In this document: piece after piece, positions 153 through 60,816 of the stretch
Layout of the letters: every line of letters begins with the position of its first letter
Position numbering within the stretch: the first letter of the stretch is position 1
Virus record (IMG/VR): IMGVR_UViG_3300049217_000071
Span: 186,001 to 250,000 of that record
DNA length: 64,000 bases
Direction: 5' to 3' (one strand)
Translations under genes and position numbers: made by a program
Notes under the pieces: generated by a model
The model's database searches: none
The model's input: only the letters and a program-made list of their open reading frames with translations
Told to the model about the DNA's origin: nothing

Positions 153-881
153 ATGAGCGGTTCGGATAAGTTACGACAGACGATTACAGATAACAAGATT
201 GGTAACGCAAAGGCTCAGAAAGTAGAAAAGGAAGTAGTTGCTGCTACGCGAAAAGCTGTAAAGAAAATGCAAGCTACACATTCAGATTATACGTTTCTTT
301 GGGAAGAAGAGCTGAAGAAATTTGATATACACGCCCATTTGAGAGATCAGTTTTCTGATCCGGCAGTCGGATCAAATTTGACTGTGAATGAGAGTGGAAT
401 CAAGCCAGATGGAGGTTTTCTTTTTCTAGTTGCGCCGGGCAAGCGTAAGTTCCTGTTAGGTGCTGTGGAAGCTAAAAAGCAAGGAACTAACGACGTGAGA
501 GCGGAAGAGGGGAAAGATAAACAAGCACGCGGAAATGCTATTGAAAGAACTTGCAAGAATTATGTTGAGATCGCAAACGCTTTCCTAGGTGAGGATATCT
601 TCTCCTATCTCATTTTCATGAGAGGCTGTGATCTAGAGGACCTTGACTCCTCTATTAGAGACAGGGTAACCAACATGAATCTAGGGTGCCCATTCAATGA
701 GCTATATGTAGATAAAATTGCAGACAAGATGGGAAAATTACATCCAAGGGCGAGTTTGTTTGTGGGAATTACTGACGTTGAGGCTATGTCAGAAAAGATA
801 TTCGAAATGTTAGAAGCCTCCATGAAATATTACTTAAACAAGTATGCGGGAGAGTTTAATGACGCTACTCAACGAAAATGA
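153..881 (+). CDS. EcoRI-family type II restriction endonuclease
   Basis: IKPDGG, EAKKQG, GNAIERxxKN and EIANxF match EcoRI catalytic and recognition motifs; GGAGG SD. Confidence 0.85.
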   Translation: MSGSDKLRQTITDNKIGNAKAQKVEKEVVAATRKAVKKMQATHSDYTFLWEEELKKFDIHAHLRDQFSDPAVGSNLTVNESGIKPDGGFLFLVAPGKRKFLLGAVEAKKQGTNDVRAEEGKDKQARGNAIERTCKNYVEIANAFLGEDIFSYLIFMRGCDLEDLDSSIRDRVTNMNLGCPFNELYVDKIADKMGKLHPRASLFVGITDVEAMSEKIFEMLEASMKYYLNKYAGEFNDATQRK

Positions 882-1965
882 GAATTATCTATCAGAGCAA
901 CTCATTACCTACATCGGCAATAAAAGAAAGCTGCTCAATTTTATTGAGACTGCCGTTCTCAAAGTCAAAGAAGATTTAGGAAAGGATAAACTGTCTCTAT
1001 TAGACGGTCTGGCTGGCTCAGGAGTTGTTAGTCGAGCCTTTAAGAAGCACGCTTCAATTCTTTACTCGAACGACTTAGAGTATTACTCATATATAATTGG
1101 ACAGTGCTATCTAACCAATGAATCAGATGTTCCACTCAAAGAATTGGGCACTCATATCGAACATTTAGAGAAAATAAAACTTCAGAATCGTAAAGGCATC
1201 ATGCGGAAGTTGTATTCTCCGCAAAACGACCAAGACATCAAAAAAGGGGAAAGAACTTTTTTCACTAATCGGAATGCCAAAATCATAGATAACGCCATGC
1301 ACTATATACATAGTAGTGATGTATCTGATAAGGTTAGACCATTTCTTCTTGCGCCGCTTCTATCAGAAGTCTCCATTCATGCTAATACCTCTGGTGTATT
1401 CAAAGGTTTTTACAAGAACTCTAAAACAGGCATAGGTCAATTTGGCGGTGATGGACAAAATGCACTCCAAAGAATACTGGGCGATATTGAAATCAAGAGC
1501 CCCGTTTTTAGTAATTTTTCGTGCCATTGTGAAATGTATAATCAGGATATAAATATTCTGGTTAAAAGTCTACCAGAAGTAGATTTGGCATATTATGATC
1601 CGCCATACAACCAACACCCATATGGTTCAAACTATTTCATGCTCAATATCGTAGCTAAAAATGAAGAACCACAAGAGGTGAGTGAAGTGTCTGGCATTCC
1701 TACTAATTGGAATAAATCAGCCTACAACAAAAGGAAAGAGGCTGAGATTTTTCTTGACGATCTTATCAAGAACACTAATGCTAAGTATGTTGCCCTGTCA
1801 TATAATGATGAGGGAATAATTCCAATTGACAAGATTAAAGACATACTATCTAATTATGGTACAACCTCTCTATTAGAGAAAGATTATAATACCTTTAGGG
1901 GTAGTAGAAATTTAAATGATAGAGACCTCAAAGTAAAAGAGATTCTCTTTTTACTTAAAAAGTAA
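859..1965 (+). CDS. N6-adenine DNA methyltransferase (D12 class, M.NlaIII/M.HpyI-like)
   Basis: YIGNKRKL, DGLAGSGVV, SNDLEYYS, DPPY; start 844 or 859. Confidence 0.9.
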   Translation: MTLLNENENYLSEQLITYIGNKRKLLNFIETAVLKVKEDLGKDKLSLLDGLAGSGVVSRAFKKHASILYSNDLEYYSYIIGQCYLTNESDVPLKELGTHIEHLEKIKLQNRKGIMRKLYSPQNDQDIKKGERTFFTNRNAKIIDNAMHYIHSSDVSDKVRPFLLAPLLSEVSIHANTSGVFKGFYKNSKTGIGQFGGDGQNALQRILGDIEIKSPVFSNFSCHCEMYNQDINILVKSLPEVDLAYYDPPYNQHPYGSNYFMLNIVAKNEEPQEVSEVSGIPTNWNKSAYNKRKEAEIFLDDLIKNTNAKYVALSYNDEGIIPIDKIKDILSNYGTTSLLEKDYNTFRGSRNLNDRDLKVKEILFLLKK

Positions 1966-2586: not shown

Positions 2587-3404
2587 TGAAAACGTGTTCT
2601 AAGTGCGGTCATCCCAAAGATGATGAATGTTTTAGTAAGGACGGTCATGGCGGTCGTAAAGCGCAATGCCAAGACTGCGACAAACAGTATCGTCTTGATC
2701 ACAAAGCAGAACAACAAGCCTACGATAAACAGTATTATCAGGATAAGAAAAAGCCGCTTTATGAAGCTAATAAGCCTCTTTTCAAAGAAAAGAATGCCAG
2801 GTATTACCAAGAGAATAGAGAAGACATTATAGACAGGGTTCGTGAATATGCGGACAAGAACGCGGACAAAGTCAAAGAAAGTCGAAAGCAGTATTACGAG
2901 GATAATAAAGATGTCATACTTGAAAAACAGGGCGTCTACTATGAAAGTAATTTTGGCAGGATCAGACTTGTTAAAGAGGCTTATCGACTTACCCATAAAA
3001 AAGAGCGCAATAAGAATCAAAAAGCGAGATATGAAAATGATCCGGTTTTTAGATTAAGGATGAACCTATCTACTGCGATATCTGGTTTCTTGAAAAGAGG
3101 CGGCTCTTCCAAAAATGGAAACTCGTGTTCAGAGCATTTGTCTTACACAATGAGTGAGTTGAAAGATCATCTCGAAAAACAATTTGAGCCGTGGATGACC
3201 TGGAACAATCAAGGACGATATAATCGTGAGAGCTGGGATGATAATGATCCGACCACTTGGACATGGCAAATTGATCACATCATCCCGCATTCTTCTCTGC
3301 CATATACAGATATGAGTGATGATAACTTCAAGAAGTGTTGGGCGCTAGAAAACTTACGCCCACTATCAGCAAAGCAAAACCTAATTGATGGGAACAGAAG
3401 ATAA
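2586..3404 (+). CDS. HNH-type homing endonuclease with N-terminal Cys4 ribbon and Y/K/E-rich helical region
   Basis: CSKC..CQDC; WQIDHIIP...NLRPLSAKQN. Confidence 0.75.
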   Translation: MKTCSKCGHPKDDECFSKDGHGGRKAQCQDCDKQYRLDHKAEQQAYDKQYYQDKKKPLYEANKPLFKEKNARYYQENREDIIDRVREYADKNADKVKESRKQYYEDNKDVILEKQGVYYESNFGRIRLVKEAYRLTHKKERNKNQKARYENDPVFRLRMNLSTAISGFLKRGGSSKNGNSCSEHLSYTMSELKDHLEKQFEPWMTWNNQGRYNRESWDDNDPTTWTWQIDHIIPHSSLPYTDMSDDNFKKCWALENLRPLSAKQNLIDGNRR

Positions 3405-3913
3405 TGTCTAAGAAGACGCTATTATTAAATGCAAGTTATGAGGTATTAAGCTTTATCCATGAGAGAAAAGTCTTCAAGCTCTTGTTCAAGGATAAGGTTG
3501 AAGTCATCTCTACTTGGGAGGATGTTGTCGTGTGGGGAACCGGCAAAGTCAAGCACCCGTCTATCTTGAGATTGAAGAACCACGTCAAACGCAATTACTT
3601 CAACTCTAACTTCAGTCGTAAGGCTCTAGTCAAAAGAGACAGAAACACCTGTCAATACTGTGGTAGGAAGCTGACGGCATCTCAAATCACCATTGACCAT
3701 GTGCTGCCAAGAGCACAAGGGGGCATTACGTCCTTCGTCAACTGTGTGGTGGCTTGCCAAATCTGCAACAATAAGAAGGCTGCTCAAACGCCGGATCAGG
3801 CAGGAATGAAGTTATTGCGAAAGCCTACCCATCCTTCCTTTTCTGCCCAGTATTATGTGGCAGATCCGCAAGAACATTGGCACGCCGATTGGGACGATTT
3901 TATGACCGGCTAA
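3404..3913 (+). CDS. HNH endonuclease (McrA-like)
   Basis: LLLNASYE; RDRNTCQYCG..TIDHVLPRAQGG..NCVVACQICNNKK. Confidence 0.9.
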   Translation: MSKKTLLLNASYEVLSFIHERKVFKLLFKDKVEVISTWEDVVVWGTGKVKHPSILRLKNHVKRNYFNSNFSRKALVKRDRNTCQYCGRKLTASQITIDHVLPRAQGGITSFVNCVVACQICNNKKAAQTPDQAGMKLLRKPTHPSFSAQYYVADPQEHWHADWDDFMTG

Positions 3914-5443: not shown

Positions 5444-5983
5444 ATGATAATCACTAATAACGAAGACCTTCTACGAGTCAAATGTGATCCCGTCACTTCA
5501 GACGAAGTTGGGGCTCTAATAGAGACCTTAGAGAAGGAACTAGAATATGCTAATCGTTTGGGAAAGGGCGGCATTGGTTTGGCAGCTTCGCAGATTGGTC
5601 TTGCCAAAGACATTGCCATCGTGCGTCTTCCCAAAGTTAGCTTCAATCTGGTCAATGCCAGGTTAGAAAAAGGATTTGATCAGGCCCTCTTTACAGAGGA
5701 AGGTTGCCTCTCATTCCCTGGTCGTGTAGAGGACACTCTCCGATTTCAGGAAGTATACATCGTCAACAATCTGGTGGAGCCCCATACCTTGGTGGCTACC
5801 GGATTGGTAGCAGTGGTGTGTCAGCACGAATTAGATCATTGCAACTCTACCCTTTTTATGGATCGTGCCGCCCCTAAACTGGAGGTGGACGCGCCCCTTG
5901 TTCGTTCTACTGTCAAAGTAGGCCCCAACGAAAAATGCCCCTGCAACTCGGGCAAAAAATACAAGAGATGTTGCGGAAGGTAA
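5444..5983 (+). CDS. def: Peptide deformylase with C-terminal SEC-C motif
   Basis: GIGLAASQ, EGCLS, QHELDH; KVGPNEKCPCNSGKKYKRCC. Confidence 0.95.
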   Translation: MIITNNEDLLRVKCDPVTSDEVGALIETLEKELEYANRLGKGGIGLAASQIGLAKDIAIVRLPKVSFNLVNARLEKGFDQALFTEEGCLSFPGRVEDTLRFQEVYIVNNLVEPHTLVATGLVAVVCQHELDHCNSTLFMDRAAPKLEVDAPLVRSTVKVGPNEKCPCNSGKKYKRCCGR

Positions 5984-14532: not shown

Positions 14533-15777
14533 ATGCAAATCGAAATTACCGAAGTAGAACCTTGTAAGCTGGTCGTTCATTATGAAGCTAACTTCCTAGA
14601 GATTTCTGACAAGCGAATGGAAGTTCAGAATGCTTTCAAGAAGGCGCCAGTTTCTGGTTTTAGACCCGGACACGCCTCTATGGATGCCATCAAGATGACC
14701 TATGGCAAGCAGATTGACGAAGCGCTCAAGCGTGCTTTGGCAGAAGATGCTTATCATAACACACTCTTCGAGAAGAAGCTCCGCCCACATGGCGCCCCTC
14801 GCTTCAACAATCTACTCTTGGATGGTGGCAAGTTCGTCTGTGAGTTCGAGCTATACACCAAGCCAGAGTTTGAATTGGCTGATTGGAAGGGAATGGAGAT
14901 CCCACAACCGCATCAAACTATGAATGCCAATATGGTTTTGGAGCAGATGCTGCAAGAAATGCGAACCAAGCTGGGAACGGCAGAACCTTACGGTGAAACC
15001 GATTTCGTCCAAAACGGAGACAGCATCATCGTGGATTACGAAGCTTCTATTGATGGAGTCAAGATCGACAATTTGAGCGTAGCTGGCGAGATGATGGTGG
15101 TCGGACAAAATCCTCTCAAGGGATTTGATGACAACTTTTTGGGAATGATTTCGGGTGAAACTCGTGAGTTTGATTTCGATGCTCCTGAAGGTGGCTTACC
15201 ATCTGTCTCTGGCAAGAGAGTTCACTTCAAGGTAACCGTAGCCACGGGTGCCAAGAATATTCCGTGTCCGTTGGATGATGAGTTGGCCAAGAAACTTGGT
15301 AAGAAAGATTATGCCGAGCTATTGGATCATGTTTCTCAAGCCGCCGCAATGCGTGTAGAAACCAACAAGAAGACACTTCTTCACGCAGCCATCGGTAATA
15401 AGATGGTGGCCGATACCAAAATTGCGGTCCCCAACTGGATGACTCTGTCAGAGGCGCAGTATTTGGCCGCTAATGCTCAGATGGATTGGAATGTTATGCA
15501 AGACACTGACAAAGAAAAGATGTTGCAGATGGCAGAAGGAAATGTCAAGCTAACCCTCATCTTGGATAAAGTTAGGGAATTAGAGCCTGCCGCTCAGTTG
15601 ACCGACCAGGAAGTGTTTGGGATTATCAAACACAACTTAGCTCAAAGCCAACAGGGCAATTTAGACGAAGTGATTCAGAATATGAATCGCACAGGTCAAT
15701 TACAGATTATGTTCTCTCGTATTAGGGACGTCAACGCTTTGGATTGCATTTCTAAACAGATCAAAGTAATCGAATAA
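14533..15777 (+). CDS. tig: Trigger factor
   Basis: GFRPGH ribosome-binding signature, FKBP-like middle domain (GFDDNFLGM), LDDELAK; 414 aa. Confidence 0.85.
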   Translation: MQIEITEVEPCKLVVHYEANFLEISDKRMEVQNAFKKAPVSGFRPGHASMDAIKMTYGKQIDEALKRALAEDAYHNTLFEKKLRPHGAPRFNNLLLDGGKFVCEFELYTKPEFELADWKGMEIPQPHQTMNANMVLEQMLQEMRTKLGTAEPYGETDFVQNGDSIIVDYEASIDGVKIDNLSVAGEMMVVGQNPLKGFDDNFLGMISGETREFDFDAPEGGLPSVSGKRVHFKVTVATGAKNIPCPLDDELAKKLGKKDYAELLDHVSQAAAMRVETNKKTLLHAAIGNKMVADTKIAVPNWMTLSEAQYLAANAQMDWNVMQDTDKEKMLQMAEGNVKLTLILDKVRELEPAAQLTDQEVFGIIKHNLAQSQQGNLDEVIQNMNRTGQLQIMFSRIRDVNALDCISKQIKVIE

Positions 15778-16102: not shown

Positions 16103-16377
16103 AAGTTGAAAGGTTTGTTATACAAGCCTGCTGTAATAAAAAGGCGATCGTCTTCAAGATTGACCGCCCCATAGGTATGTCTCTACTCCAATTTTTGACA
16201 AGTAACGGGTTTACATTAGCTGATCACTTCACCAAGGCAGGGATGCTGTATGCCGATAATTCGGCCTTAATAATAACAGGTCCCATCGGTTCTGATAAGA
16301 TCAATGCCAAGTGCAAGAAACCCGAGTGCGACCAAATCTTCAATGATTTCGAGGCATTGCTTGTCAAAATGGGGTGA
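16099..16377 (+). CDS. Hypothetical protein
   Basis: ATGA coupling. Confidence 0.55.
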   Translation: MKVERFVIQACCNKKAIVFKIDRPIGMSLLQFLTSNGFTLADHFTKAGMLYADNSALIITGPIGSDKINAKCKKPECDQIFNDFEALLVKMG

Positions 16378-16973
16378 GAATGGTCAAAGAGGCCGAAATA
16401 CACGAGTTGATATCGACGGCCTATCACGAGGCAGGTCATACGGTGTATGCCTTGCTCAATTTTATGAAGGTTGATTTGGTCTCTATTATTAGACCCAAGG
16501 GAAGCAAAAGAATAGGCGAAACTTGCTATTCTCATCCTGCTAACCTTAACTCTGTTAAGAGTGCAAAGCTTTTTCGTATGCTCTCTGAAATAGAGTTAGG
16601 GGTATGTTATGCGGGCGAAGAAGTCGAAAAGATGTTATTCAAGTCTCTTTCCGGCTCTGATCAAGTGCCTCAGTTTATCAAAGATGGTGCCAGCGGCGAT
16701 ATAAAGAGAGCAACGAATTTCATTAGGAAGTATAATCTGTTGCCTCTCGGCAAAAATAAGAAGAGGAGTAATTTCAAGAAGAGATTGTCGAAAAAAATTC
16801 AAGGCGAGCTAAACAATAATTGGGATGCCATTACGTTGATAGCTCATAGCTTGTATCATCACCGCAAGCTGACTTTCGACGATCTACAAAAGCTGCTCAC
16901 TACCAAAACACGCAACAAGAAGTTTTGGAAGAGTCAGTTCAAGAAGATGATCGCTTTTTATAGCGTGCCTTGA
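16374..16973 (+). CDS. Stand-alone peptidase M41 (FtsH protease domain)-like protein
   Basis: TAYHEAGH, YAGEEVE, GASGDIKRAT; no AAA or TM domain. Confidence 0.75.
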   Translation: MRMVKEAEIHELISTAYHEAGHTVYALLNFMKVDLVSIIRPKGSKRIGETCYSHPANLNSVKSAKLFRMLSEIELGVCYAGEEVEKMLFKSLSGSDQVPQFIKDGASGDIKRATNFIRKYNLLPLGKNKKRSNFKKRLSKKIQGELNNNWDAITLIAHSLYHHRKLTFDDLQKLLTTKTRNKKFWKSQFKKMIAFYSVP

Positions 16974-17104: not shown

Positions 17105-20100
17105 ATGACCGACTTTGTTTCATTGCATAATCAGACTGATTTTTCTATTCTCGATTCACTTATCTCTCCCAAGGCGCTGTTCAAGCGAGCCAAAGAATTG
17201 GGACAAACGGCCATCGCTATTACAGATCACGGATCGGTGGCAGCCGCCTGGGATGCCTGGAAGGCTTCCAAAGACACCGGAGTCAAGCTCATTATTGGGT
17301 GCGAGTGTTATTTTCAGAATGATGCCGCCAATGTCAATGAGAAGTTCCGACACATTGTTCTGTTGGCCAAGAATGCGGTAGGCTATCGCAATCTACTTAC
17401 ACTCAACAAAAAAGGTTTCGACCAGAGTTCCTTCGTAGGTAAGCGAGTGTATTCCGTTCTGGACTGGAAATTGTTGGAGCAATACTCTGAGGGGCTAATT
17501 TGTTTGACGGCCTGCGGTAATGGTGTGGTGAGTCAATTATTGATGAACCATAAGATGGATGAAGCGGAAGATACTGTGCTGCGCCTCAAGCAGATTTTCG
17601 GCCCTAATTTGGGTTTGGAAGTGCAGCCCAATAATATGAAGCGTGGTTCTAACATCTTCAATGATGAGATTGATCAGTTCTTTCTCAATCGCCAGCTCAT
17701 CAATCTGGGTAAGAAGCACAACATTAGAGTGGTGGCCGCCTGCAACGCCCACTATCTCAAGAAGGAAGAATCGGAAACACACGATGTCTTTTTGGCCATC
17801 GGTTCTCATCAACCTATCTTTTCCAACTTCCGTTTGCGTTATCCCGTCCCAGATTTTTACCTGAAGACCGGCGATGAGGTGAAGGCTTTCTTCACCAGAA
17901 ATTATGGCGAAGTTGTGGCACAAGAACTGTGCGACAACAGCCTTCATTTTGCCAATCTGTGCGAGAAGCCAGAGTGGATTGATCCCAAATACTCTAATCC
18001 TACTGGTAAAGAGCTTCCTATCTTTCCCGTCAAGGACGAGCCTGATTACCAAGAGTTCCTAGAATGGAGACGTGCTCGTCCAGCAGCAGAGCGGGTTTTG
18101 GATGAGGACAAGGCTTTCTTGCGCTTTCATTGCTCTAAGTATTTCGATGCTCGCATCAAGGGATTGAATGATTCCAATGTAGAGCAGTATCAAAACCGTT
18201 TAGTGGAAGAGTTGGATGTTATTGAGTATCACGGTTTCTCCAGCTATATGCTCATCGTGGCCGACTTCATTGATTGGGCTCGTAAACACGACATTGCAGT
18301 AGGTGATGGTCGTGGATCGGTAGGAGGTTCTCTGATTGGGTTCTTGTTAGGAATCCATCAAGCGGATCCTATCAAGTATAATCTGATCTTCGCCCGATTC
18401 CACAACAAGGAGAAGTCTAGCTTCCCAGATATTGATACGGACTTTGCTCCATCAGGTCGTGAGAAAGTGCAGAACTATCTCCGACAGAAATATGGTGACG
18501 ACCACGTAGCTCACGTGTCCAACGTCAATACCATTACGCCCAAAGTGTATGCCAGAGATATTGCACGTGCTTGCGAACTAGGCGGTTCCAAAGATGAGGC
18601 GGTCAAGATTGGTAATGAGGTGGCAGACTGTTTGCCAGCCGAAATCCATTCCATCGATGAAGCTTTGACCAAAGTTCCTTTGTTTGCCGAGTATGTCAAG
18701 AAGTATCCTGAGTTTGAGAAATACAAAGACATCTGTGGCAAGTATCGTGCTTGGTCTACTCACGCAGGTGGTATCGTTATCTCAGCCCGTCCTTTGACCG
18801 GATTGGTGCCGCTCAGAAAAGATAAGGATGGCGCTCTCGCTATTGAGTATGATAAGGATAAGGCCGAAGAAAACGGTCTGGTCAAGATGGATACCTTGGG
18901 CCTTTCTACCCTGGATATCATTGGTCAAACTATGCAACTGATCAAGGAAGCTGGTAAGCCATTGCCTGCTGAACCTATGGATTATGATGTGTATGACAAG
19001 GAAACCTATGACGTCATTTCTGGTGGCGATACCTTCTGCGTTTTCCAGTTGGGAACCAGCGGAGGCACGGTGGATTTGTGCCGTCGTATCAAGCCTAACA
19101 GCATCAATGATTTGGCCAACATCAACGCTTTGGCCAGACCTTCCGCTCGTGATATGCGCAATGACTTTATCAAGACGCGTAATGGGGAAAGGCCTATGTC
19201 TCTCTTGCACCCCAACCTAGGCCGTGCTTTCAATAGCACCTACGGATTCGGTTTGTATGAAGAGTGTTTGATGTATCTGGCTCAGGATATTGCCGGTTGG
19301 AGTTTGCATTCGGCTGACCGTTTGCGTAAGCTGACCAAAGAAAAAGGCAAGAACCCCAAGAAGGCTCAGGAATGGAGAACAGAGTTCATCAATGACGCTG
19401 TCAAAAACAATGTCAATGAAACCATTGCCAAGAGAATCTGGGACGAAGTTGTGGATAAGTTCCAAGGCTACGGCTTCAACGTTTCTCACGCTGTGCTGTA
19501 TTCGATGACTGGCTACAAGACGGCCTTTCTGAAAGCTCATTATCCAATTGAGTTTCTAATGGCCAACTTGATGGCGGAAGTCAAATCTAATACTCCTGAT
19601 GCTAGAGGCAACATTGAGAAGATCAAGAAAGAGCTACGCAAGCATCGTGTCAAGGTAGTGCCGCCCGATGTCAATAAGTCCCAACTGGTTTACACCATTG
19701 AAGATGGCAATCGACTCATCACCGGCTTGGATGCTATCAAGTTTGTGGGTGAGGACGCCATTAAAGACATTATCAGTAAGAGGCCCTTCAAGGACTTTTT
19801 CGATTTTATGGTGCGTGTCAGCTCTAAAGCTGTGCGAGCCAATAGCATTCAAGCTCTGGCTGCCTGTGGCGCCTTGGACTCTTTCAAGATTCCGCGTAAG
19901 CTAATGTTCTTGTATTGCTCGGACTATCGCAAGAAGCTACAAGTTTGGTTGAAGAAGCACGATCCCAATGTGGATCAGTTTGTGTATCCATATCCGTCCG
20001 AACCGGATTGGAGCGATCCTGAGCTATATGCTTTGGAACAGTATTATTTGGGTGAGTCTTTCATCTGTCGACCGGCCCTGGCCTATGGCAATTTCTTCAA

Positions 20101-20626
20101 GGATGATCACAAGACAACCCAAGATGTCAAGAAGGCCAAAGACAAAACCAACGTCAGTTCTTTCAAGGGAATTGTGCGTAGCTTCTTTGAGTTCCGAGTC
20201 AAAAAGGAAACCAGTAAGTATTACGGCAAGCCAATGATCAAAGCTGTCTTGGAAGATAAGAATGGTGATCAATGCACCTGCACCATCTTCCCCGATCGTT
20301 GGGAAACGGTCAAGCAACGTATTCAGGAACTCAACAAGAAGGTGGAATTTGGGGTGGGCATTGCTCTGCACTTTGCTGGCAACACCAATAGCTATGAAGA
20401 TTATATGGGTATCATCTTGGACAATCTGTTCAATATAGCTATTCCGCCTGGATTGCCGGTTGACTTGAAAGCCAAGAGAATCAATCTCAAGGAAGCTAGA
20501 GCCAAGCTTTCGCCGCAAGAGTTGGGTAAAAAGGTCAGAGATATCAAGGACTTGTTTGAGGAAATTGAAGACGTCCTATATGACGAGGGCCTCATCGATT
20601 TAGAGGATGATCCCGAAGATGACTGA
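17105..20626 (+). CDS. dnaE: DNA polymerase III alpha subunit
   Basis: PHP domain (AITDHG), GRGSVGGS, FPDIDTDF, HAGG, KMDTLGL, GYGFNVSHA; no intein seen. Confidence 0.97.
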   Translation: MTDFVSLHNQTDFSILDSLISPKALFKRAKELGQTAIAITDHGSVAAAWDAWKASKDTGVKLIIGCECYFQNDAANVNEKFRHIVLLAKNAVGYRNLLTLNKKGFDQSSFVGKRVYSVLDWKLLEQYSEGLICLTACGNGVVSQLLMNHKMDEAEDTVLRLKQIFGPNLGLEVQPNNMKRGSNIFNDEIDQFFLNRQLINLGKKHNIRVVAACNAHYLKKEESETHDVFLAIGSHQPIFSNFRLRYPVPDFYLKTGDEVKAFFTRNYGEVVAQELCDNSLHFANLCEKPEWIDPKYSNPTGKELPIFPVKDEPDYQEFLEWRRARPAAERVLDEDKAFLRFHCSKYFDARIKGLNDSNVEQYQNRLVEELDVIEYHGFSSYMLIVADFIDWARKHDIAVGDGRGSVGGSLIGFLLGIHQADPIKYNLIFARFHNKEKSSFPDIDTDFAPSGREKVQNYLRQKYGDDHVAHVSNVNTITPKVYARDIARACELGGSKDEAVKIGNEVADCLPAEIHSIDEALTKVPLFAEYVKKYPEFEKYKDICGKYRAWSTHAGGIVISARPLTGLVPLRKDKDGALAIEYDKDKAEENGLVKMDTLGLSTLDIIGQTMQLIKEAGKPLPAEPMDYDVYDKETYDVISGGDTFCVFQLGTSGGTVDLCRRIKPNSINDLANINALARPSARDMRNDFIKTRNGERPMSLLHPNLGRAFNSTYGFGLYEECLMYLAQDIAGWSLHSADRLRKLTKEKGKNPKKAQEWRTEFINDAVKNNVNETIAKRIWDEVVDKFQGYGFNVSHAVLYSMTGYKTAFLKAHYPIEFLMANLMAEVKSNTPDARGNIEKIKKELRKHRVKVVPPDVNKSQLVYTIEDGNRLITGLDAIKFVGEDAIKDIISKRPFKDFFDFMVRVSSKAVRANSIQALAACGALDSFKIPRKLMFLYCSDYRKKLQVWLKKHDPNVDQFVYPYPSEPDWSDPELYALEQYYLGESFICRPALAYGNFFKDDHKTTQDVKKAKDKTNVSSFKGIVRSFFEFRVKKETSKYYGKPMIKAVLEDKNGDQCTCTIFPDRWETVKQRIQELNKKVEFGVGIALHFAGNTNSYEDYMGIILDNLFNIAIPPGLPVDLKAKRINLKEARAKLSPQELGKKVRDIKDLFEEIEDVLYDEGLIDLEDDPEDD

Positions 20627-28498: not shown

Positions 28499-29059
28499 AT
28501 GTCCAAGATTATATTAGGGTTTGACGTTTCCAGTACCACCATCGGTTGGTGCGTTTTGAGTCTCGATGAGAAAAACAATATCTCTTTTGTCAAAGCAGAT
28601 TATGTGAAGCCAGTCAAGAAAGGCTCTATTATTGAGAGAATAGTAGATACCAGAGATAAAATCCAAAAAATCATTGACGAAGTCAAGCCAGACTATATTG
28701 GTATCGAAGATATCATCAAGTTTATGGCAGGGAAGAGTAGCGCTCAAACCATCATAATGCTAACTACATTCAATCGAATGATTGGATTATGTGCTTATGA
28801 TTATCTACATAGGTCTCCTGAATTGTTTAGTGTTATGACCATCAGACACGGACTCAAACTGGATAATGTCTTTCCAAAAAAAGAAGATATGCCCGCTCTT
28901 GTCTCGCAACGTTTAGGAATTATATTCCCTTACCAGCTCGGAAAAAAGGGCGCTCTCAAAGTGGAGAACTATGATATGGCGGACGGTATTGCCGTAGCGT
29001 TATATTATGCATTGGTTCTGACCGGGCAAACCAAGGTCAAGCGCAAGGGTAAGAAATGA
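28499..29059 (+). CDS. RuvC-like Holliday junction resolvase
   Basis: ILGFDVSSTTIGW, IGIED, DMADGIAVA. Confidence 0.8.
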   Translation: MSKIILGFDVSSTTIGWCVLSLDEKNNISFVKADYVKPVKKGSIIERIVDTRDKIQKIIDEVKPDYIGIEDIIKFMAGKSSAQTIIMLTTFNRMIGLCAYDYLHRSPELFSVMTIRHGLKLDNVFPKKEDMPALVSQRLGIIFPYQLGKKGALKVENYDMADGIAVALYYALVLTGQTKVKRKGKK

Positions 29060-30015
29060 ATCTCAAGGAAGCCTACGCAACTCTAGAACTTGCCGAGGGT
29101 GATACCCCGGAAGAGGCTAAGAAACAATACCGCAAGTTGACCAAGAAATATCATCCAGATGTTAGCAAAGAAAAAGATGCGGATGAGAAGATCAAGAAGA
29201 TCAATGAAGCCTATGAGTGTGTCAAGAATGGCAAAGGCAATGATCGCGAACCCGCTATGCAGCGTGGTAATGGGAGGTATAACCCTTTCCATAGACAACA
29301 AGTTGTGCAAATAGAGAATGTAGAGCTGCATCTAAGTATTGATTTCAAGGAATCCGTTTTAGGTTGTAAGAAAGAGGTCAAGTATTCTCGCAAAACCAAG
29401 TGTCAAAGCTGCGATGGATCTGGAGAGGTTGTTCTCAACAATGGATGTAAGAAATGTGGTGGTCGTGGTCAAGTAACCAGTCAGAGAAGTGGCATGATCT
29501 TTATGCAAACTTGTCCCGAGTGTTTTGGCAAGACCCACGTAACCGAGTGTACGGTTTGTCACGCGCAGGGGCTCACACAGACGGACGTGTCTGTGCAGGT
29601 GTCCGTACCTGCGGGCATAACTGATAAAGCCGTTTTGCGTTTGCAGGGTATGGGTAACTATGCTGGTTCGCTGATGGGATTTGTAGATCAGTATGCGGAT
29701 GTCTTTTGCCATGTCAATGTAGCTTCAGAGCCGGGCCTTCGTATAGAGGGTAAAAGCGTAGTAACGGATCTCAGTATCTCTTTGTTAGACGCTTTGCGCG
29801 GCTGTGAACGACAGGTCAAGACCATTTTTGGTACCAAGGGTATTACCATAAAGCCACATTCTAGAAACCATGACGAGGTGATTATTCCCCATCATGGAGT
29901 GGGTGGAACGGGAGATCAAAAGGTCATTCTGGACGTCCAATACCCCAAGAACGTAGATAAACTGATTGCTCTTTTAGCAGATGAGGTGAACCATGGCTTT
30001 GGCTCTGTACTGTAA
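29056..30015 (+). CDS. dnaJ: DnaJ co-chaperone
   Basis: J domain with HPD, four CxxCxxxG/K repeats, C-terminal domain. Confidence 0.92.
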   Translation: MNLKEAYATLELAEGDTPEEAKKQYRKLTKKYHPDVSKEKDADEKIKKINEAYECVKNGKGNDREPAMQRGNGRYNPFHRQQVVQIENVELHLSIDFKESVLGCKKEVKYSRKTKCQSCDGSGEVVLNNGCKKCGGRGQVTSQRSGMIFMQTCPECFGKTHVTECTVCHAQGLTQTDVSVQVSVPAGITDKAVLRLQGMGNYAGSLMGFVDQYADVFCHVNVASEPGLRIEGKSVVTDLSISLLDALRGCERQVKTIFGTKGITIKPHSRNHDEVIIPHHGVGGTGDQKVILDVQYPKNVDKLIALLADEVNHGFGSVL

Positions 30016-39456: not shown

Positions 39457-40230
39457 ATGAAACTCCGAGAGCTACTAGATATGATGCAAAAAACTGCTGT
39501 CGAAATTGGTGCCTCTGCTCCAATGATTTGCGGTGGTACGCCCAGAGATAAGTTTCTTGGACGTTTGGAAAACATTGCAGATATCGATGTAACGACCGGT
39601 GATAAGACGGTAGACTATCTTTCCCAAGAGTTTGCTATCAAGTTGCGTAAGCAATTCAACATTACCAGAAAAACGATGGAAGACGGTCATAGCACCATTT
39701 TTGTGGGTAGCTTGAAGGTGGATTTCTCATCCAATTTCATGGTGCCCAATATCGACACCATCCTGGGTCAGATGAACATCCCTAACCCTTCCGATATGCA
39801 AAGAGAGATGTATAGTCGAGACTTCACTTGCAACGCTCTATTGCTGTCGCTAGATCTCAAGAAGATTACCGATCCTACGGGGCACGGCTTTCAAGACATT
39901 CGAGACCGTAAAATCAAGACTTGCCTATCGCCTGAGATTACTCTTACCTCTAATAGAAACCGTGTCGTCAGGGCCATCTATTTGGCTTGCAAGTTGGATT
40001 TCGATATCGATGAGGCTATTATCGATTACGTGCGAAAGAACCCTCAGACAGTCAAGATATCCACTACTAAATCAATGTCAGATAAGCTAACAGAAGCTTT
40101 TACCAGAGATGCCGATAAAGCTTCTAAACTGATTACTAGAATGGGTTTATGGAATTACATTCCTATCAATGAAAAGATGTATCCATACTATCAAGCACAA
40201 CTGAAAGGTAATCTCAATGTCGGTCAATAA
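39457..40230 (+). CDS. Class II tRNA nucleotidyltransferase/poly(A) polymerase family protein
   Basis: GGTPRD..DIDV, RDFTCNAL, DPTG.GFQD, RVVRA. Confidence 0.85.
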   Translation: MKLRELLDMMQKTAVEIGASAPMICGGTPRDKFLGRLENIADIDVTTGDKTVDYLSQEFAIKLRKQFNITRKTMEDGHSTIFVGSLKVDFSSNFMVPNIDTILGQMNIPNPSDMQREMYSRDFTCNALLLSLDLKKITDPTGHGFQDIRDRKIKTCLSPEITLTSNRNRVVRAIYLACKLDFDIDEAIIDYVRKNPQTVKISTTKSMSDKLTEAFTRDADKASKLITRMGLWNYIPINEKMYPYYQAQLKGNLNVGQ

Positions 40231-56868: not shown

Positions 56869-57651
56869 ATGAAAAACCAAAGCGTATCAGATTTTGTCGC
56901 TGCAACTATGGATGCAGTGCTAAACAGCCCAGAACACAAAGCCTTGTTCGGCTCCCAATACAAGTATGCACAGTCCAAGGATGCTATGTGCGCCAAGCAC
57001 GGCAAAATGGACTCTTGCGCAGCCGATGATCAAGATGCCAAGAAGAAGGACTCTAGCTCTGCCTCTGACATGAACGATGCCAGAAAAGTAAAGAAGTATG
57101 ACTCTTCTGATGCAGATGACCAGGATGCTAAGAAGAAAGACTCTTCCGATGCTGATGATCAAGATGCTAAGAAGATGCCACCATGGCTAAAGAAGAGGGA
57201 CGAATCTTCTGCTGACGATCAAGATGCCAAGAAGAAAGATTCTTCTGACGCAGATGATCAAGACGCCAAGAAGAAAGACTCTTCCGATGCTGACGATCAA
57301 GATGCCAAAAAGAAGGACTCTTCTGACGCTGATGATGACGACCTAGAGGCTTCTGCCGCTTTTGATATTGCTATCGATAGTTTGCTCACCGCCTCCGCCG
57401 CTCTTGATTCCGTGGGTCTCGGTAAGGGCTCTTCAGTTATCTTGAAGGTAGCTTCTTTGGTTGTTGAAGCCAAGAAGAAGGAAAAGGATTCCAAGAAAAA
57501 GAAGAAGGAAGACTCTAAGAAGAGTGATTCCAAGAAGTCTTCTACCAAGGATTCTCAATCCGCTAAGGACAAGAAGTCTCCTCCAAAGAAAGACTCCAAG
57601 AAGGATGAGAAGAAATCCTCTTCCAAGCCTTCCTCTTCTTCCAAGAAGTAA
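56869..57651 (+). CDS. Low-complexity D/K/S-rich putative internal head protein
   Basis: GAGGA SD; DSSDADDQDAKKK repeats. Confidence 0.65.
   Translation: MKNQSVSDFVAATMDAVLNSPEHKALFGSQYKYAQSKDAMCAKHGKMDSCAADDQDAKKKDSSSASDMNDARKVKKYDSSDADDQDAKKKDSSDADDQDAKKMPPWLKKRDESSADDQDAKKKDSSDADDQDAKKKDSSDADDQDAKKKDSSDADDDDLEASAAFDIAIDSLLTASAALDSVGLGKGSSVILKVASLVVEAKKKEKDSKKKKKEDSKKSDSKKSSTKDSQSAKDKKSPPKKDSKKDEKKSSSKPSSSSKK
57025..57340 (+). repeat. Tandem ~39-nt coding repeats (DSSDADDQDAKKK, about 7 copies)
   Basis: Units diverge at synonymous positions. Confidence 0.9.
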
Positions 57652-57664
57652 ATCGTAATAGTTG

Positions 57665-57734
57665 CACCCTCAGAAGGAATTGAACCTCCGCTCCCATAGT
57701 TTAGCAGACCTGGGCAGGAACCACCAATGAGGGT
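57665..57734 (-). tRNA. Non-canonical tRNA-Ser(GCU)-like RNA, 70 nt, with vestigial D-arm, short variable loop and no encoded CCA
   Basis: ACCCUCA/UGAGGGU acceptor stem plus G73; GGAGG-UUCAAUU-CCUUC T-arm; CU-GCU-AA loop. Confidence 0.7.
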
Positions 57735-57777
57735 GTAACTATATGTCGAATTAAACATACGTTACAGCTACTTATCG

Positions 57778-58338
57778 ATGAATACAACCATCTGTTCAAT
57801 ATATAAAATTGTCAATAATATGGACGGCAATGTATATATTGGGCAAACATGGATTCCTGTTCAAGCTAGATTTAGGAGGCACAAGTATGCTTCCAGTAAT
57901 TGCATCAAGCTTGCAAGAGCCATAAAAAAGTACGGAGAAGATAACTTCAAAGTCGAACTAATTACTGTCTGTGGCACCCAAGAGGTTGCAGATTATTTGG
58001 AAGCCTATTTTATCAACAAATTTGACTCTATCAGGAGTGGATACAACATACTGGCTGGTGGTAAGACAAGTAGCAGAAGGGGAGCAAAACACTCCCAAGA
58101 AACTAAGGATAAACTGTCAAAATTAGCCACAGGGCGTAGGCACTCGATCGAGACAAAAGAAACTCTGTCCGCACTAAGAAAAGGCATTCCACTCTCGATC
58201 GAACATAGATCCAAGTTATCAGAGGCTAAGAAAGGCAAAAAGTTCACCGAAGAGCATAAATCTAAATTACTTGGAAATCATAAGGGCATGACGTGGAATA
58301 TAGTAGACGGCAAAAGAGTGTGGATGGAGAAACGATGA
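57778..58338 (+). CDS. GIY-YIG homing endonuclease with NUMOD3 repeats
   Basis: SIYKI..VYIGQT, GYN, HSQETKDKLS repeats. Confidence 0.9.
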   Translation: MNTTICSIYKIVNNMDGNVYIGQTWIPVQARFRRHKYASSNCIKLARAIKKYGEDNFKVELITVCGTQEVADYLEAYFINKFDSIRSGYNILAGGKTSSRRGAKHSQETKDKLSKLATGRRHSIETKETLSALRKGIPLSIEHRSKLSEAKKGKKFTEEHKSKLLGNHKGMTWNIVDGKRVWMEKR

Positions 58339-58568
58339 GCGTCAAATTATTCAATATGTCTAATTTTGAGGACGAAATCTATCGTTCTATGGAAACAACC
58401 CTGGCCAAAAACCAGACGGAAAATACCTACCGGTTCCAAAAACTCGCCAAGGCTGTCGATTTCTTGAACACTGCCGCTGAGATCTTTGATCAAGCTGGCA
58501 TGTTAGAGGAATCTCGTCAAATCACTGAGATTTTACGTAGTTTAGCCAAGGACTTCTCCAATGAATAA
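58335..58568 (+). CDS. Small helical head-region protein, paralog of the next gene's N-terminus
   Basis: ATGA coupling; FEDE..M..KA...L..A.EIF...G. Confidence 0.6.
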   Translation: MSVKLFNMSNFEDEIYRSMETTLAKNQTENTYRFQKLAKAVDFLNTAAEIFDQAGMLEESRQITEILRSLAKDFSNE

Positions 58569-60096: not shown

Positions 60097-60816
60097 ATGG
60101 AAACGCACTACCTATACAAAATCACGGATACGCTAAATAACAAGGTTTACATCGGTCAAACGGCTGATAACAAAAAGAGATGGTCGCAACACAAGGCTTA
60201 CGCCAAACATCCTGAAAAAACGGGCCAATACATCCATCGTGCGATAGCAAAATATGGTGTGGAGAATTTTATATTCGAAATCATTGCTGCCTGCAAGACA
60301 CAAGAAGATACTGATGAAACTGAGAGTGTTCTAATTGAGCAATATGATAGTCGCAATAAAGAGCACGGATATAATCTGATGATTGGTGGCAGCCATGGAG
60401 GACATTCAGAAGAAACGAAGAAGAAACAATCCGATGCTACTTTCAAGCAAATTGCCGAGAAAGGTCATCCCGCCCAAGGCACCAAACGAACTCCCGAACA
60501 AATCCAACATCTTGTGCAAGCTCGTCAAGAAAACCCGGTGGAATATACACCAGAAATCAGACAACGAATGTCAGAAGCACATATAGGACATACGGAGTCA
60601 GAAGAAACCAAGCAAAAGAAATCGGAAGCTGCTACCTCAGATTGGGAGAAACGCAATGCCATCCGAGAGGCAACGGGAGAATTGAAATGCAACGCCCCTG
60701 GTTGTAATATCTCTGGCAGCAAGCAAGCCTACAAAATGATCAATGGTATCAGCTATTGCAACAAGCACGGACTGCGTCTGTGGCGCTATGGCAGACTAGA
60801 TCGCATAAACCCCTGA
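60097..60816 (+). CDS. GIY-YIG homing endonuclease with NUMOD3-like repeats and C-terminal Cys/His motif
   Basis: YLYKIT..VYIGQT..RW..H, GYNL. Confidence 0.9.
   Translation: METHYLYKITDTLNNKVYIGQTADNKKRWSQHKAYAKHPEKTGQYIHRAIAKYGVENFIFEIIAACKTQEDTDETESVLIEQYDSRNKEHGYNLMIGGSHGGHSEETKKKQSDATFKQIAEKGHPAQGTKRTPEQIQHLVQARQENPVEYTPEIRQRMSEAHIGHTESEETKQKKSEAATSDWEKRNAIREATGELKCNAPGCNISGSKQAYKMINGISYCNKHGLRLWRYGRLDRINP

What the first reader, a model, noticed from the sequence alone, without database searches (positions are those of the whole stretch)
57665..57748. Hidden antisense tRNA-Ser(GCU)-like RNA with a mitochondrial-style architecture
Seen: the minus strand reads ACCCUCA UUGGUGGUUCC UG CCCAGGU CUGCUAA ACUAUGGG AGC GGAGG UUCAAUU CCUUC UGAGGGU G(CAA). 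It has a perfect 7-bp acceptor stem, discriminator G, a canonical T-arm and a canonical C32-U33-GCU-A37-A38 loop. The D-arm is reduced to at most 2 bp around a retained GG, the anticodon stem extends to 7 bp with a bulged A, and the variable loop is only 3 nt. A motif-A variant (CGACATAT, 57741-57748) ends 6 nt before the 5' end, and the flanks extend the acceptor helix to about 15 bp like a precursor. Known: bacterial SerRS recognises the long variable arm, which is absent here, and D-armless tRNA-Ser(GCU) is characteristic of animal mitochondria. Inference: it could be an orthogonal tRNA needing a phage synthetase, a decoy for host anticodon nucleases or modification enzymes, or another tRNA-mimic ncRNA. 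Standard tRNA finders may miss it.
Basis: partly seen in the sequence, partly recalled or inferred. Interest (0 to 1): 0.85.

Follow-up and report, generated by a model that had tools for sequence, protein, structure and literature searches.

The report
tRNA-like gene riding a homing endonuclease
The 70-base antisense tRNA look-alike in this jumbo phage is real and is kept by selection in related phages, but it descends from a phage arginine tRNA and travels with a mobile nuclease gene, so it is not a mitochondrial-style serine tRNA.

Summary
Minus strand 57734..57665 reads exactly as described. Default ARAGORN and Rfam gathering thresholds miss it, but the Rfam tRNA model aligns end to end at 22.5 bits (threshold 29).

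It is not a chance match or a neutral relic. The element and the adjacent GIY-YIG homing endonuclease (57778-58338) form a ~690-bp insertion that 30 syntenic IMG/VR loci lack. Eight related endonucleases sit at this same site in other metagenomic phages. Four of them carry the same reduced-D-arm element. One (L132) carries a canonical tRNA there (44.5 bits). Three carry none.

Among window, L124 and L135 the element is 90-94% identical, while four-fold sites of neighbouring genes are saturated (32-35%). One anticodon-stem pair is A-U, G-C and U-A in the three sequences.

The ancestry is tRNA-Arg, not Ser. The best outside matches are almost all phage tRNA-Arg, and the anticodon arm resembles Arg(UCU) with U34 changed to G.

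Best reading: a selected, tRNA-Arg-derived tRNA mimic carried as cargo of a homing-endonuclease cassette, probably non-decoding. Transcription, charging and function are untested.

The parts
57665..57734 (-). tRNA-like core (70 nt): acceptor stem, reduced D region, extended anticodon arm, 3-nt variable region, T-arm, discriminator G
   Evidence: Sequence; Rfam tRNA 22.5 bits over the full model; own model R1 92 bits; RNAalifold consensus cloverleaf
57693..57714 (-). Extended anticodon arm: 7 bp with a bulged A. The loop CUGCUAA is at 57701-57707 and the GCU triplet at 57703-57705
   Evidence: Pair 28-42 is A-U (window), G-C (L124) and U-A (L135). Pair 31-39 is U-A, or A-U in L123. The arm resembles phage tRNA-Arg(UCU) with position 34 changed from U to G
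57673..57689 (-). T-arm GGAGG / UUCAAUU / CCUUC, containing the only GGTTCRANTCC match in the window
   Evidence: nearly invariant in all five family members
57717..57725 (-). Remnant of the D-arm: 2-bp helix GG/CC around UGGUU. It has no A14, A20 or A21
   Evidence: the G-C pair becomes A-U in L123
57659..57664 (-). 3' trailer (G)CAACU(A), which pairs with the 5' leader. It is not CCA
   Evidence: Invariant in all five loci; helix extension
57735..57765 (-). Conserved 5' leader block and hairpin (GUAAC...GUUAC arms). It includes ACAUAUAG four nt before the tRNA-like 5' end. The leader AGUUAC can pair either with this hairpin or with the trailer
   Evidence: Its role as promoter or processing signal is inferred, not shown
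57778..58338 (+). GIY-YIG / NUMOD3 homing endonuclease. A public gene call starts at 57820
   Evidence: Pfam and PHROGs; NCBIfam; homologs
57652..58334 (.). Insertion of tRNA-like element plus endonuclease, relative to HE-less relatives
   Evidence: Intergenic gap is 909 bp here against ~220-260 bp in most relatives. The last ~220 bp align to the relatives' gap
58335..58568 (+). Small conserved gene (77 aa) whose start overlaps the endonuclease stop. It marks the downstream edge of the insertion site
56869..57651 (+). Upstream gene (260 aa, Lys/Ser/Glu-rich tail), in the head-gene module. It marks the upstream edge of the insertion site

Best explanation
The element is a gene derived from a phage tRNA-Arg, most like Arg(UCU). 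It is carried, in the opposite orientation, as cargo of a free-standing GIY-YIG homing-endonuclease cassette inserted between two head-module genes.

In one lineage (L132) it still folds as a canonical cloverleaf. In the window's lineage the D-arm has collapsed to 2 bp, the anticodon stem has been rebuilt to 7 bp with a bulge, and position 34 is G.

Selection keeps it as a folded minus-strand RNA whose acceptor/T-arm minihelix and loops are almost invariant.

The following steps are inferred, not shown. I think it is transcribed from the conserved leader block. It would then be trimmed and CCA-tailed like a tRNA, either by host enzymes or by the phage's own CCA-adding-like protein at 39457-40230. 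It would act as a non-decoding tRNA mimic that binds a tRNA-recognising factor, such as a tRNA-targeting defence nuclease or a modification enzyme. It would not act as a serine tRNA. The endonuclease spreads the pair between phages.
For: Real and tRNA-derived:
- Rfam tRNA model hit over the full model.
- L132 has a canonical tRNA at the homologous position: called by default ARAGORN, Rfam 44.5 bits.

Linked to the endonuclease:
- Present in 5 of 8 endonuclease clusters at this site (window, L123, L124, L135, L132/L133).
- Absent from all 30 endonuclease-less loci and from endonucleases at other sites.

Under selection:
- 90-94% identity among window, L124 and L135, against 32-35% at four-fold sites of flanking genes.
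- 5 pairs changed on both sides. The covariation score was reached by 1 of 500 shuffles and far exceeds the slid controls.
- A 1-nt indel in the D region rules out a conserved ORF on either strand.

Minus strand:
- All six G.U cells in the cloverleaf would be A.C mismatches on the plus strand, and none go the other way.
- The T-loop and anticodon loop keep the tRNA consensus.

Arg ancestry:
- The top outside hits of model R1 are tRNA-Arg.
- The most similar of 78 phage tRNAs are mostly tRNA-Arg.
- All six IMG/VR tRNAs sharing L132's 5' half are tRNA-Arg.

Probably non-decoding:
- No A14, A20 or A21, and no Ser identity elements.
- L135 has C33 and C55. L132 has C37 and G38. L123 has two mismatches in the anticodon stem.

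Context:
- GIY-YIG endonucleases are known partners of phage tRNA genes, and of tRNA-based counter-defence (PMC2330249, PMC13096335).
- Phage tRNAs counter tRNA-cleaving defences (PMC10264068, PMC11464382, PMC11555353).
Against: - There is no expression data of any kind. Every gene of 120 aa or more in the window that I take to be real is on the other strand, and no promoter could be demonstrated.
- Thermodynamic and consensus folds of the plus strand are almost as good.
- The family has only five distinct sequences, so the covariation statistics are thin.
- Three endonuclease lineages at the same site do without the element, so it is dispensable for homing.
- The near-invariance of the window/L124 loops, including U33, A37 and the T-loop, would also fit a working tRNA.
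- The binding partner is pure inference.
Confidence: 0.5

Rival explanations
1. It is a working decoder: a D-arm-reduced class I tRNA with anticodon GCU that reads AGC/AGU. It would be charged either by ArgRS, through C35 and U36, or by some other enzyme. It would act as a nuclease-resistant or recoding tRNA.
For: - The window and L124 copies keep U33, A37, A38, the T-loop, a perfect acceptor stem and a GG in the D region.
- Every nucleotide, loops included, is conserved against saturated neutral divergence.
- The homolog in L132 also carries a serine-codon triplet, GGA.
- AGY is 32% and UCY 52% of serine codons in the window.
- The phage encodes a CCA-adding-like enzyme.
Against: - The Rfam score is below threshold for all four reduced copies.
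- The long variable arm that bacterial SerRS needs is absent (established knowledge).
- A20, a major ArgRS determinant, is lost.
- Arg insertion at AGY would mistranslate the phage's own genes, which do not avoid AGY.
- L135 has C33 and C55. L132 has C37.
- No synthetase is present in the window.
Confidence: 0.15
2. The selected structure is on the plus strand. The antisense image of an old tRNA gene would form a 13-15-bp-stemmed structure in the late mRNA, between the upstream head gene and the endonuclease. It would uncouple or damp endonuclease translation, or serve as a processing or stability site.
For: - A plus-strand RNA very probably exists, because all the genes I take to be real here are on the plus strand.
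- The plus-strand fold is -32.8 kcal/mol with z -4.1, better than the minus strand.
- The consensus fold energy is -24.0 against -25.6.
- The invariant flank mismatch A.C on the minus strand is a G.U pair on the plus strand.
- Endonuclease-only loci have a Shine-Dalgarno-like spacer 9-11 nt after the upstream stop. Loci with the element have a long structured spacer and a weak or absent Shine-Dalgarno sequence.
Against: - Six G.U cells inside the cloverleaf become A.C mismatches on the plus strand.
- Conservation of the tRNA-specific T-loop and anticodon-loop sequences has no plus-strand rationale.
- L132 keeps a canonical minus-strand tRNA.
Confidence: 0.15
3. It acts at the DNA level. The T-arm and acceptor segment would be a recognition, cleavage or immunity site for the neighbouring GIY-YIG enzyme, as T4 SegB recognises GGTTCRANTCC in tRNA genes. 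Conservation would then reflect protein-DNA contacts or homing co-conversion.
For: - SegB's 27-bp site is centred on the tRNA T-arm motif (PMC2330249).
- The element contains exactly that motif.
- Across all five members, the T-arm plus the 3' acceptor strand plus the trailer is the most invariant block.
- The trailer is CAAC rather than the CCAR that SegB prefers.
Against: - Compensatory base-pair changes in the anticodon stem and acceptor stem are not expected for a duplex protein-binding site.
- The empty sites of endonuclease-less relatives contain no T-arm motif, so homing at this locus does not use it.
- The enzyme is only about 35-40% identical to annotated Seg-type or intron-type enzymes, and it is not shown to be a SegB ortholog.
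Confidence: 0.08
4. It is a neutral tRNA pseudogene that only looks conserved, because the ~100-bp patch was exchanged recently between phages.
For: - All four reduced copies score below tRNA thresholds.
- L123's copy is clearly more degraded (78% identity to the window), although its endonuclease is the closest relative at 85% amino-acid identity.
- A canonical tRNA exists in L132.
Against: - Window, L124 and L135 differ at only 4-7 of 71 columns. At least four of those substitutions form two compensatory double changes at one pair, and others keep pairing as G.U.
- Flanking four-fold sites are at random-level identity.
- No paralog with this acceptor stem was found elsewhere in the source contig to act as a conversion donor.
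Confidence: 0.07

Closest known systems
Phage-encoded tRNA-Arg genes, especially Arg(UCU), in phage tRNA clusters
   Same: - Acceptor stem ACCCUC(A/G), the T-arm and, in L132, the whole D-arm match phage tRNA-Arg.
- The anticodon arm of the window copy resembles Arg(UCU).
- Class I body with a short variable region.
   Different: - The anticodon triplet is GCU here and GGA in L132, not an Arg anticodon.
- The D-arm has collapsed and A20 is lost.
- The anticodon stem is 7 bp with a bulge.
- It scores below tRNA-model thresholds.
- It is a single gene on the antisense strand inside a head-gene operon rather than part of a tRNA cluster.
T4/T6 SegB-tRNA association: a GIY-YIG homing endonuclease embedded among tRNA genes (PMC2330249; PMC13096335)
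   Same: - A free-standing GIY-YIG endonuclease sits within 50-150 bp of a tRNA-type gene.
- The endonuclease and the tRNA are inherited together.
- In T6 the pairing serves counter-defence against a tRNA-cleaving system.
   Different: - Here there is one reduced tRNA-like gene, divergently oriented.
- The cassette sits in a structural-gene site whose empty form has no tRNA sequence.
- Orthology to SegB is not shown, and recognition of tRNA DNA by this enzyme is untested.
Animal mitochondrial tRNA-Ser(AGY/GCU) lacking the D-arm
   Same: GCU triplet, missing or reduced D-arm, lengthened anticodon stem. ARAGORN's mitochondrial mode calls the element mtRNA-Ser(gct).
   Different: - There is no shared ancestry: the family is Arg-type.
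- It is a bacterial-virus context with no dedicated mitochondrial-type SerRS or EF-Tu.
- The T-arm and T-loop are fully canonical here.
- The resemblance is convergent in shape only.
Non-decoding tRNA mimics: mascRNA, viral tRNA-like structures, the tmRNA tRNA-like domain
   Same: The acceptor/T-arm half is kept and the D/anticodon half is altered. Such RNAs are handled by RNase P, RNase Z and the CCA enzyme (established knowledge).
   Different: - The Rfam mascRNA model scores only 16.4 bits against a threshold of 42.5.
- ARAGORN finds no tmRNA.
- There is no G3.U70.
- Here a full anticodon arm with a tRNA-like 7-nt loop is retained.
Non-canonical bacterial and phage tRNAs, the 8/4 and 9/3 allo-tRNAs (PMC5389517)
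   Same: Unusual cloverleaf geometry found in metagenomes and phages, with a mismatch between anticodon and body identity.
   Different: - Allo-tRNAs have a Ser-type body with a long variable arm and altered acceptor/T-stem lengths.
- This element has a standard 7/5 acceptor/T branch, an Arg-type body and no long arm.

Membership tests
Canonical tRNA (Rfam RF00005 / ARAGORN default) | Score at or above the curated threshold; called by a standard finder | tested here: not met
   22.5 bits against gathering score 29. Default ARAGORN makes no call. L123 scores 18.4, and L124 and L135 have no tRNA-model hit. The homolog in L132 does pass: 44.5 bits and a default ARAGORN call.
Canonical tRNA (Rfam RF00005 / ARAGORN default) | 7-bp acceptor stem, discriminator base, 5-bp T-stem with a GTTCRANYC-type loop | tested here: met
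Canonical tRNA (Rfam RF00005 / ARAGORN default) | 3-4-bp D-stem with A14, G18-G19 and A21 | tested here: not met
   Only a 2-bp helix. GG is present, but the D region contains no A.
Canonical tRNA (Rfam RF00005 / ARAGORN default) | 7-nt anticodon loop with U33 and a purine at 37, conserved among homologs | tested here: inconclusive
   Met in window, L124 and L123. L135 has C33. L132 has C37 and G38.
Canonical tRNA (Rfam RF00005 / ARAGORN default) | Transcribed, processed, CCA-tailed and aminoacylated | not testable with these tools
   No expression data are available. The 3' flank is CAA, not CCA.
Bacterial tRNA-Ser (class II) | Long variable arm, the main SerRS determinant | tested here: not met
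   The variable region is 3 nt. It is 7 nt in L132.
Bacterial tRNA-Ser (class II) | Serine anticodon | tested here: met
   GCU in the four reduced copies and GGA in L132. This is the only Ser-like feature.
Phage tRNA-Arg lineage (descent) | Body sequence closest to tRNA-Arg among all isotypes | tested here: met
   The seven best outside hits of R1, and 9 of the top 10, are tRNA-Arg. Alignment ranking among 78 tRNAs is. Six of six IMG/VR tRNAs sharing L132's 5' half are tRNA-Arg. Caveat: several of these loci were fetched using the acceptor sequence.
Phage tRNA-Arg lineage (function) | Arg anticodon together with A20, C35 and U/G36 | tested here: not met
   The window type keeps C35 and U36 but has G34 and no A20. 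L132 keeps A20 but has G35.
Homing-endonuclease / tRNA cassette (SegB-like association) | GIY-YIG endonuclease gene within 1 kb of a tRNA-type gene and inherited with it | tested here: met
   43-nt spacer here. Presence of the element tracks the endonuclease: 5 of 8 endonuclease clusters at this site, against 0 of 30 loci without it.
Homing-endonuclease / tRNA cassette (SegB-like association) | The endonuclease recognises tRNA T-arm DNA | not testable with these tools
   The motif is present in the element but absent from the empty sites. This needs a cleavage assay.
Neutral tRNA pseudogene | Diverges at the neutral rate and shows no structure-preserving substitutions | tested here: not met
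   90-94% identity against 32-35% at four-fold sites. Compensatory pairs.
mascRNA-type or tmRNA-type tRNA mimics | Match to the family model | tested here: not met
   mascRNA 16.4 bits against 42.5. No tmRNA found.

The most novel reading that the evidence does not exclude
The RNA could be a translationally active, D-arm-reduced class I tRNA used in a bacterial cell. It would read serine AGY codons (UCY in the L132 lineage) without the long variable arm. That shape could be invisible to defence nucleases that cut class II tRNAs. Alternatively it could be charged through C35/U36 by ArgRS and so recode AGY. Either way it would be spread between jumbo phages by a homing endonuclease.
Probability: 0.12. 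Interest if true: 0.9.

Novelty: new variant of a known kind. Interest (0 to 1): 0.6.

Why it matters
Phage tRNA genes and their partnership with GIY-YIG endonucleases are known, and phage tRNAs are now recognised as counter-defence tools. This case is different in one respect: a tRNA gene has lost its D-arm and its original anticodon, falls below every standard detector, and is still held almost invariant by selection while its neighbours have diverged to saturation.

If it is a non-decoding mimic, it would be a compact natural example of a tRNA decoy moved around by a homing endonuclease. It would also show that routine phage annotation misses such genes.

If it still decodes, it would be the first D-arm-reduced tRNA shown to work with bacterial machinery.

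Either way it gives a small, precisely defined RNA with natural variants (canonical, reduced, absent) at one locus, which makes it directly testable.

Tried and rejected
- Other tRNA-like elements in the window: none.
- DNA similarity of the locus to GenBank phages: none. The conserved 229-aa neighbour also has no GenBank phage match.
- Exact and degenerate pattern scans for more copies. IMG/VR returned only the source contig. JGI metagenome contigs returned only a genuine tRNA-Arg(ACG). GTDB genomes returned nothing. So there is no host tRNA or prophage source.
- The element in the 30 endonuclease-less relatives, or next to related endonucleases at other sites: absent.
- An endonuclease tree to decide gain versus loss of the element: unresolved apart from the window+L123 pair.
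- Promoter evidence. The sigma-70 scan found nothing. A looser [GA]CATATA[TG] core is enriched in intergenic DNA on both strands and lies upstream of several genes, but it is near-palindromic and AT-rich, so it does not settle the strand. The invariant stretch in the first 10 endonuclease codons is also present in element-less loci and lies at variable distance, so it is not a tRNA promoter.
- Thermodynamic folding to choose the strand: not decisive.
- Codon usage: uninformative.
- A protein-coding reading of the element: rejected because of the 1-nt indel between homologs.
- Sub-threshold Rfam hits here (Plastid-ycf2, IMES-5, snoRNAs): the first is the antisense image of a tRNA, the rest are noise.
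- Bacterial Schlafen as a class II tRNA cutter: the paper reports Lys, Ala and Met targets, so it gives no support.

Full report
WHAT IS THERE

The window is bases 186001-250000 of a 268,344-bp IMG/VR jumbo-phage contig. Every ORF of 120 aa or more that I take to be a real gene lies on the plus strand. They encode replication and recombination functions, then terminase, portal and other head proteins.

The finding lies in the 126-nt gap between a 260-aa head-module gene (56869-57651) and a GIY-YIG/NUMOD3 homing endonuclease (57778-58338). It has a perfect 7-bp acceptor stem, G73 followed by CAA, a 5-bp T-stem with loop UUCAAUU, an anticodon loop CUGCUAA, a 2-bp D remnant, a 7-bp anticodon stem with a bulged A, and a 3-nt variable region.

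Default ARAGORN and Rfam at gathering scores report nothing in the whole window. With permissive thresholds the Rfam tRNA model aligns end to end at 22.5 bits (threshold 29). ARAGORN calls it Ser(gct) only in relaxed or mitochondrial modes, which also produce many false calls nearby. The T-loop motif GGTTCRANTCC occurs only here in 64 kb. No other tRNA-like element exists in the window.

IT IS HALF OF A MOBILE INSERTION

Thirty IMG/VR loci keep the gene order 1229 aa, 260 aa, small gene, 234 aa, 229 aa, with neighbour proteins 40-90% identical. None has the endonuclease or the element. Their gap is mostly ~220-260 bp, against 909 bp here. The last ~220 bp of the window's gap align to theirs and turn out to be a small 77-aa gene. 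Junction sequences show a clean empty site: stop codon, 10-25 nt carrying a ribosome-binding site, then the small gene.

A protein search found seven closer endonuclease homologs, 60-85% identical. Every one sits at this same site in other metagenomic phages. These loci fall into three states.
- L123, L124 and L135 have the reduced tRNA-like element in the same antisense position.
- L132/L133 has, at the homologous position, a 75-nt (ARAGORN: 76-nt) gene that default ARAGORN calls a tRNA and that scores 44.5 bits with Rfam.
- L125-131 and L136 have the endonuclease only, 9-11 nt after the upstream stop.

Related endonucleases at other sites have no such element. So the element tracks the endonuclease: 5 of 8 clusters at this site, against 0 of 30 loci without it. 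The endonuclease tree does not resolve whether the element was gained or lost.

IT IS UNDER SELECTION AS A STRUCTURE

Between window, L124 and L135, four-fold degenerate sites of the endonuclease and the two downstream genes are 32-35% identical, which is saturated. The element is 90-94% identical. The few differences preserve structure.
- Anticodon-stem pair 28-42 is A-U, G-C and U-A in the three sequences.
- Pair 31-39 flips to A-U in L123.
- The D-remnant pair G-C becomes A-U in L123.
- Acceptor pair 7-66 is G-C in L132.
- Pairs 5-68 and 50-64 alternate between Watson-Crick and G.U.

On the five-sequence alignment, 90% of cells pair. Five pairs show double changes. The covariation score is reached by 1 of 500 shuffles, and sliding the partners by 1-3 columns drops pairing to 39-59%. 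A 1-nt indel in the D region excludes a conserved reading frame.

A neutral pseudogene is therefore rejected for the window/L124/L135 group. L123's copy has two anticodon-stem mismatches and a broken first T-stem pair. It is only 78% identical to the window although its endonuclease is the closest relative, so it may be decaying.

WHICH STRAND

Energies do not decide. With flanks the plus strand folds as well or better, and the plus-strand consensus is -24.0 against -25.6 kcal/mol.

Three things favour the minus strand. First, the homology to tRNA, with a canonical tRNA in L132. Second, the retention of tRNA-type T-loop and anticodon-loop sequences. Third, all six G.U cells inside the cloverleaf would be A.C mismatches in the plus strand, and none go the other way. 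The one exception is an invariant A.C in the flanking extension, which is a G.U pair on the plus strand.

I could not show a promoter. The 30 nt upstream of the element on the minus strand are conserved at a fixed distance in four of five loci. They form a hairpin whose 3' arm is the leader.

WHAT IT DESCENDS FROM

A covariance model of the family (R1) finds phage tRNA-Arg genes with anticodons UCU, ACG, CCU, CCG, GCG and UCG as its best outside matches. That is the top seven, and nine of the top ten.

Plain alignment against 78 phage tRNAs ranks tRNA-Arg first. All six IMG/VR tRNAs that share L132's 5' half are tRNA-Arg. The window's anticodon loop and its 3' stem strand match Arg(UCU) tRNAs apart from U34 to G.

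Caveat: some of these loci were fetched through the acceptor sequence. However, Arg tRNAs not selected that way score equally high.

The Ser label thus rests on the triplet alone. There is no long variable arm and no Ser-type acceptor. The two major ArgRS determinants are split: the window type keeps C35 and U36 but has no A20, while L132 keeps A20 but has G35. The likeness to animal mitochondrial tRNA-Ser(AGY) is convergent.

No copy or host source exists in GTDB genomes. No second tRNA with this acceptor stem was found in the source contig.

HOW IT PROBABLY WORKS

Shown:
- It is a tRNA-Arg-derived gene linked to a homing endonuclease.
- It is kept by purifying and structure-preserving selection.
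- The acceptor/T-arm half and the flanks are nearly invariant across both types, while the D/anticodon half differs completely between the L132 type and the window type.

Inferred: it is transcribed from the minus strand, matured like a tRNA, and acts as a tRNA mimic rather than a decoder.

The non-decoding reading rests on four points: the missing D-loop residues, the lack of any matching identity set, C33 and C55 in L135, and C37/G38 in L132.

Two papers give the framework. T4 SegB, a GIY-YIG enzyme, sits among tRNA genes, recognises the GGTTCRANTCC T-arm motif in DNA, and drives inheritance of the tRNA region (PMC2330249). SegB homologs co-localise widely with tRNA genes, and amplify a tRNA gene that defeats a tRNA-cleaving defence (PMC13096335). 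Phage tRNAs that neutralise tRNA-targeting defences are documented (papers listed).

The window also encodes a 257-aa CCA-adding-like nucleotidyltransferase. It encodes no synthetase.

The rivals are a working AGY decoder, a plus-strand mRNA structure that insulates endonuclease translation, a DNA site for the endonuclease, and a recently exchanged relic. Each is laid out with its evidence in the Rival explanations section. None is excluded outright except neutral decay for the window's own lineage.

VERDICT

It is a new variant of a known kind, the phage tRNA plus homing-endonuclease cassette. It has one unusual feature: a selected, D-arm-collapsed, sub-threshold tRNA derivative. Function remains to be shown by RNA sequencing and biochemistry.

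Noticed in passing
window 39457-40230 (+): A 257-aa class II nucleotidyltransferase (PolyA_pol head domain, E 3.6e-11). Its best NCBIfam and PDB relatives are CCA-adding enzymes, but it is far below family cut-offs and much shorter than they are. A phage tRNA 3'-end enzyme would fit a tRNA-like gene that lacks an encoded CCA.
   Followed up: partly
window 58335-58568 (+): A small 77-aa gene whose ATG overlaps the endonuclease stop (ATGA). Its 5' part (58364-58514) is 67-82% identical at the DNA level in all relatives. That is far above the neighbouring genes, so it is a likely recognition region for the homing endonuclease.
   Followed up: partly
window 60097-60816 (+): A second, very divergent GIY-YIG/NUMOD3 endonuclease two genes downstream. 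The same site is occupied in L004, L006, L015, L016 and L140, so this head module is a repeated landing ground for endonuclease genes. No tRNA-like element accompanies it.
   Followed up: partly
window 57735-57765: A hairpin with GTAAC/GTTAC arms between the element and the endonuclease start. One arm is also the leader that pairs with the tRNA trailer, so the two helices are mutually exclusive. A hairpin is present at this place in all five loci, with a different sequence in L124.
   Followed up: partly
window intergenic regions, e.g. 109, 3935, 17021, 43920, 45866 (+) and 57739-57746 (-): The k-mers GCATATA, GATATAT and TATATGT are 6-9-fold enriched in intergenic DNA. [GA]CATATA[TG] lies 20-85 nt upstream of several genes, including the DNA polymerase, terminase and portal genes. 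This may be the phage's promoter core, but the motif is near-palindromic, so the strand is ambiguous.
   Followed up: partly
window 5444-5983, 14533-15777, 16374-16973, 29056-30015: The phage encodes a peptide deformylase with a SEC-C motif, a trigger-factor-like protein, an FtsH-type M41 peptidase fragment and a full DnaJ. That is an unusual set of translation-coupled and folding functions.
   Followed up: no
window 17105-20626 (+), 153-1965 (+), 3404-3913 (+): A bacterial Pol III alpha-type replicative polymerase, an EcoRI-like endonuclease next to a Dam-class methyltransferase, and an HNH endonuclease.
   Followed up: no
L124 7520-7574 (-): A sub-threshold type I hammerhead ribozyme match (21.4 bits, threshold 34) just beside a LAGLIDADG endonuclease gene in a related phage.
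   Followed up: no
window 56869-57651 (+), C-terminal ~55 residues: A Lys/Ser/Glu/Asp-rich low-complexity tail on the gene just upstream. It varies in length among relatives and is the source of several spurious Rfam and ORF hits on both strands.
   Followed up: no
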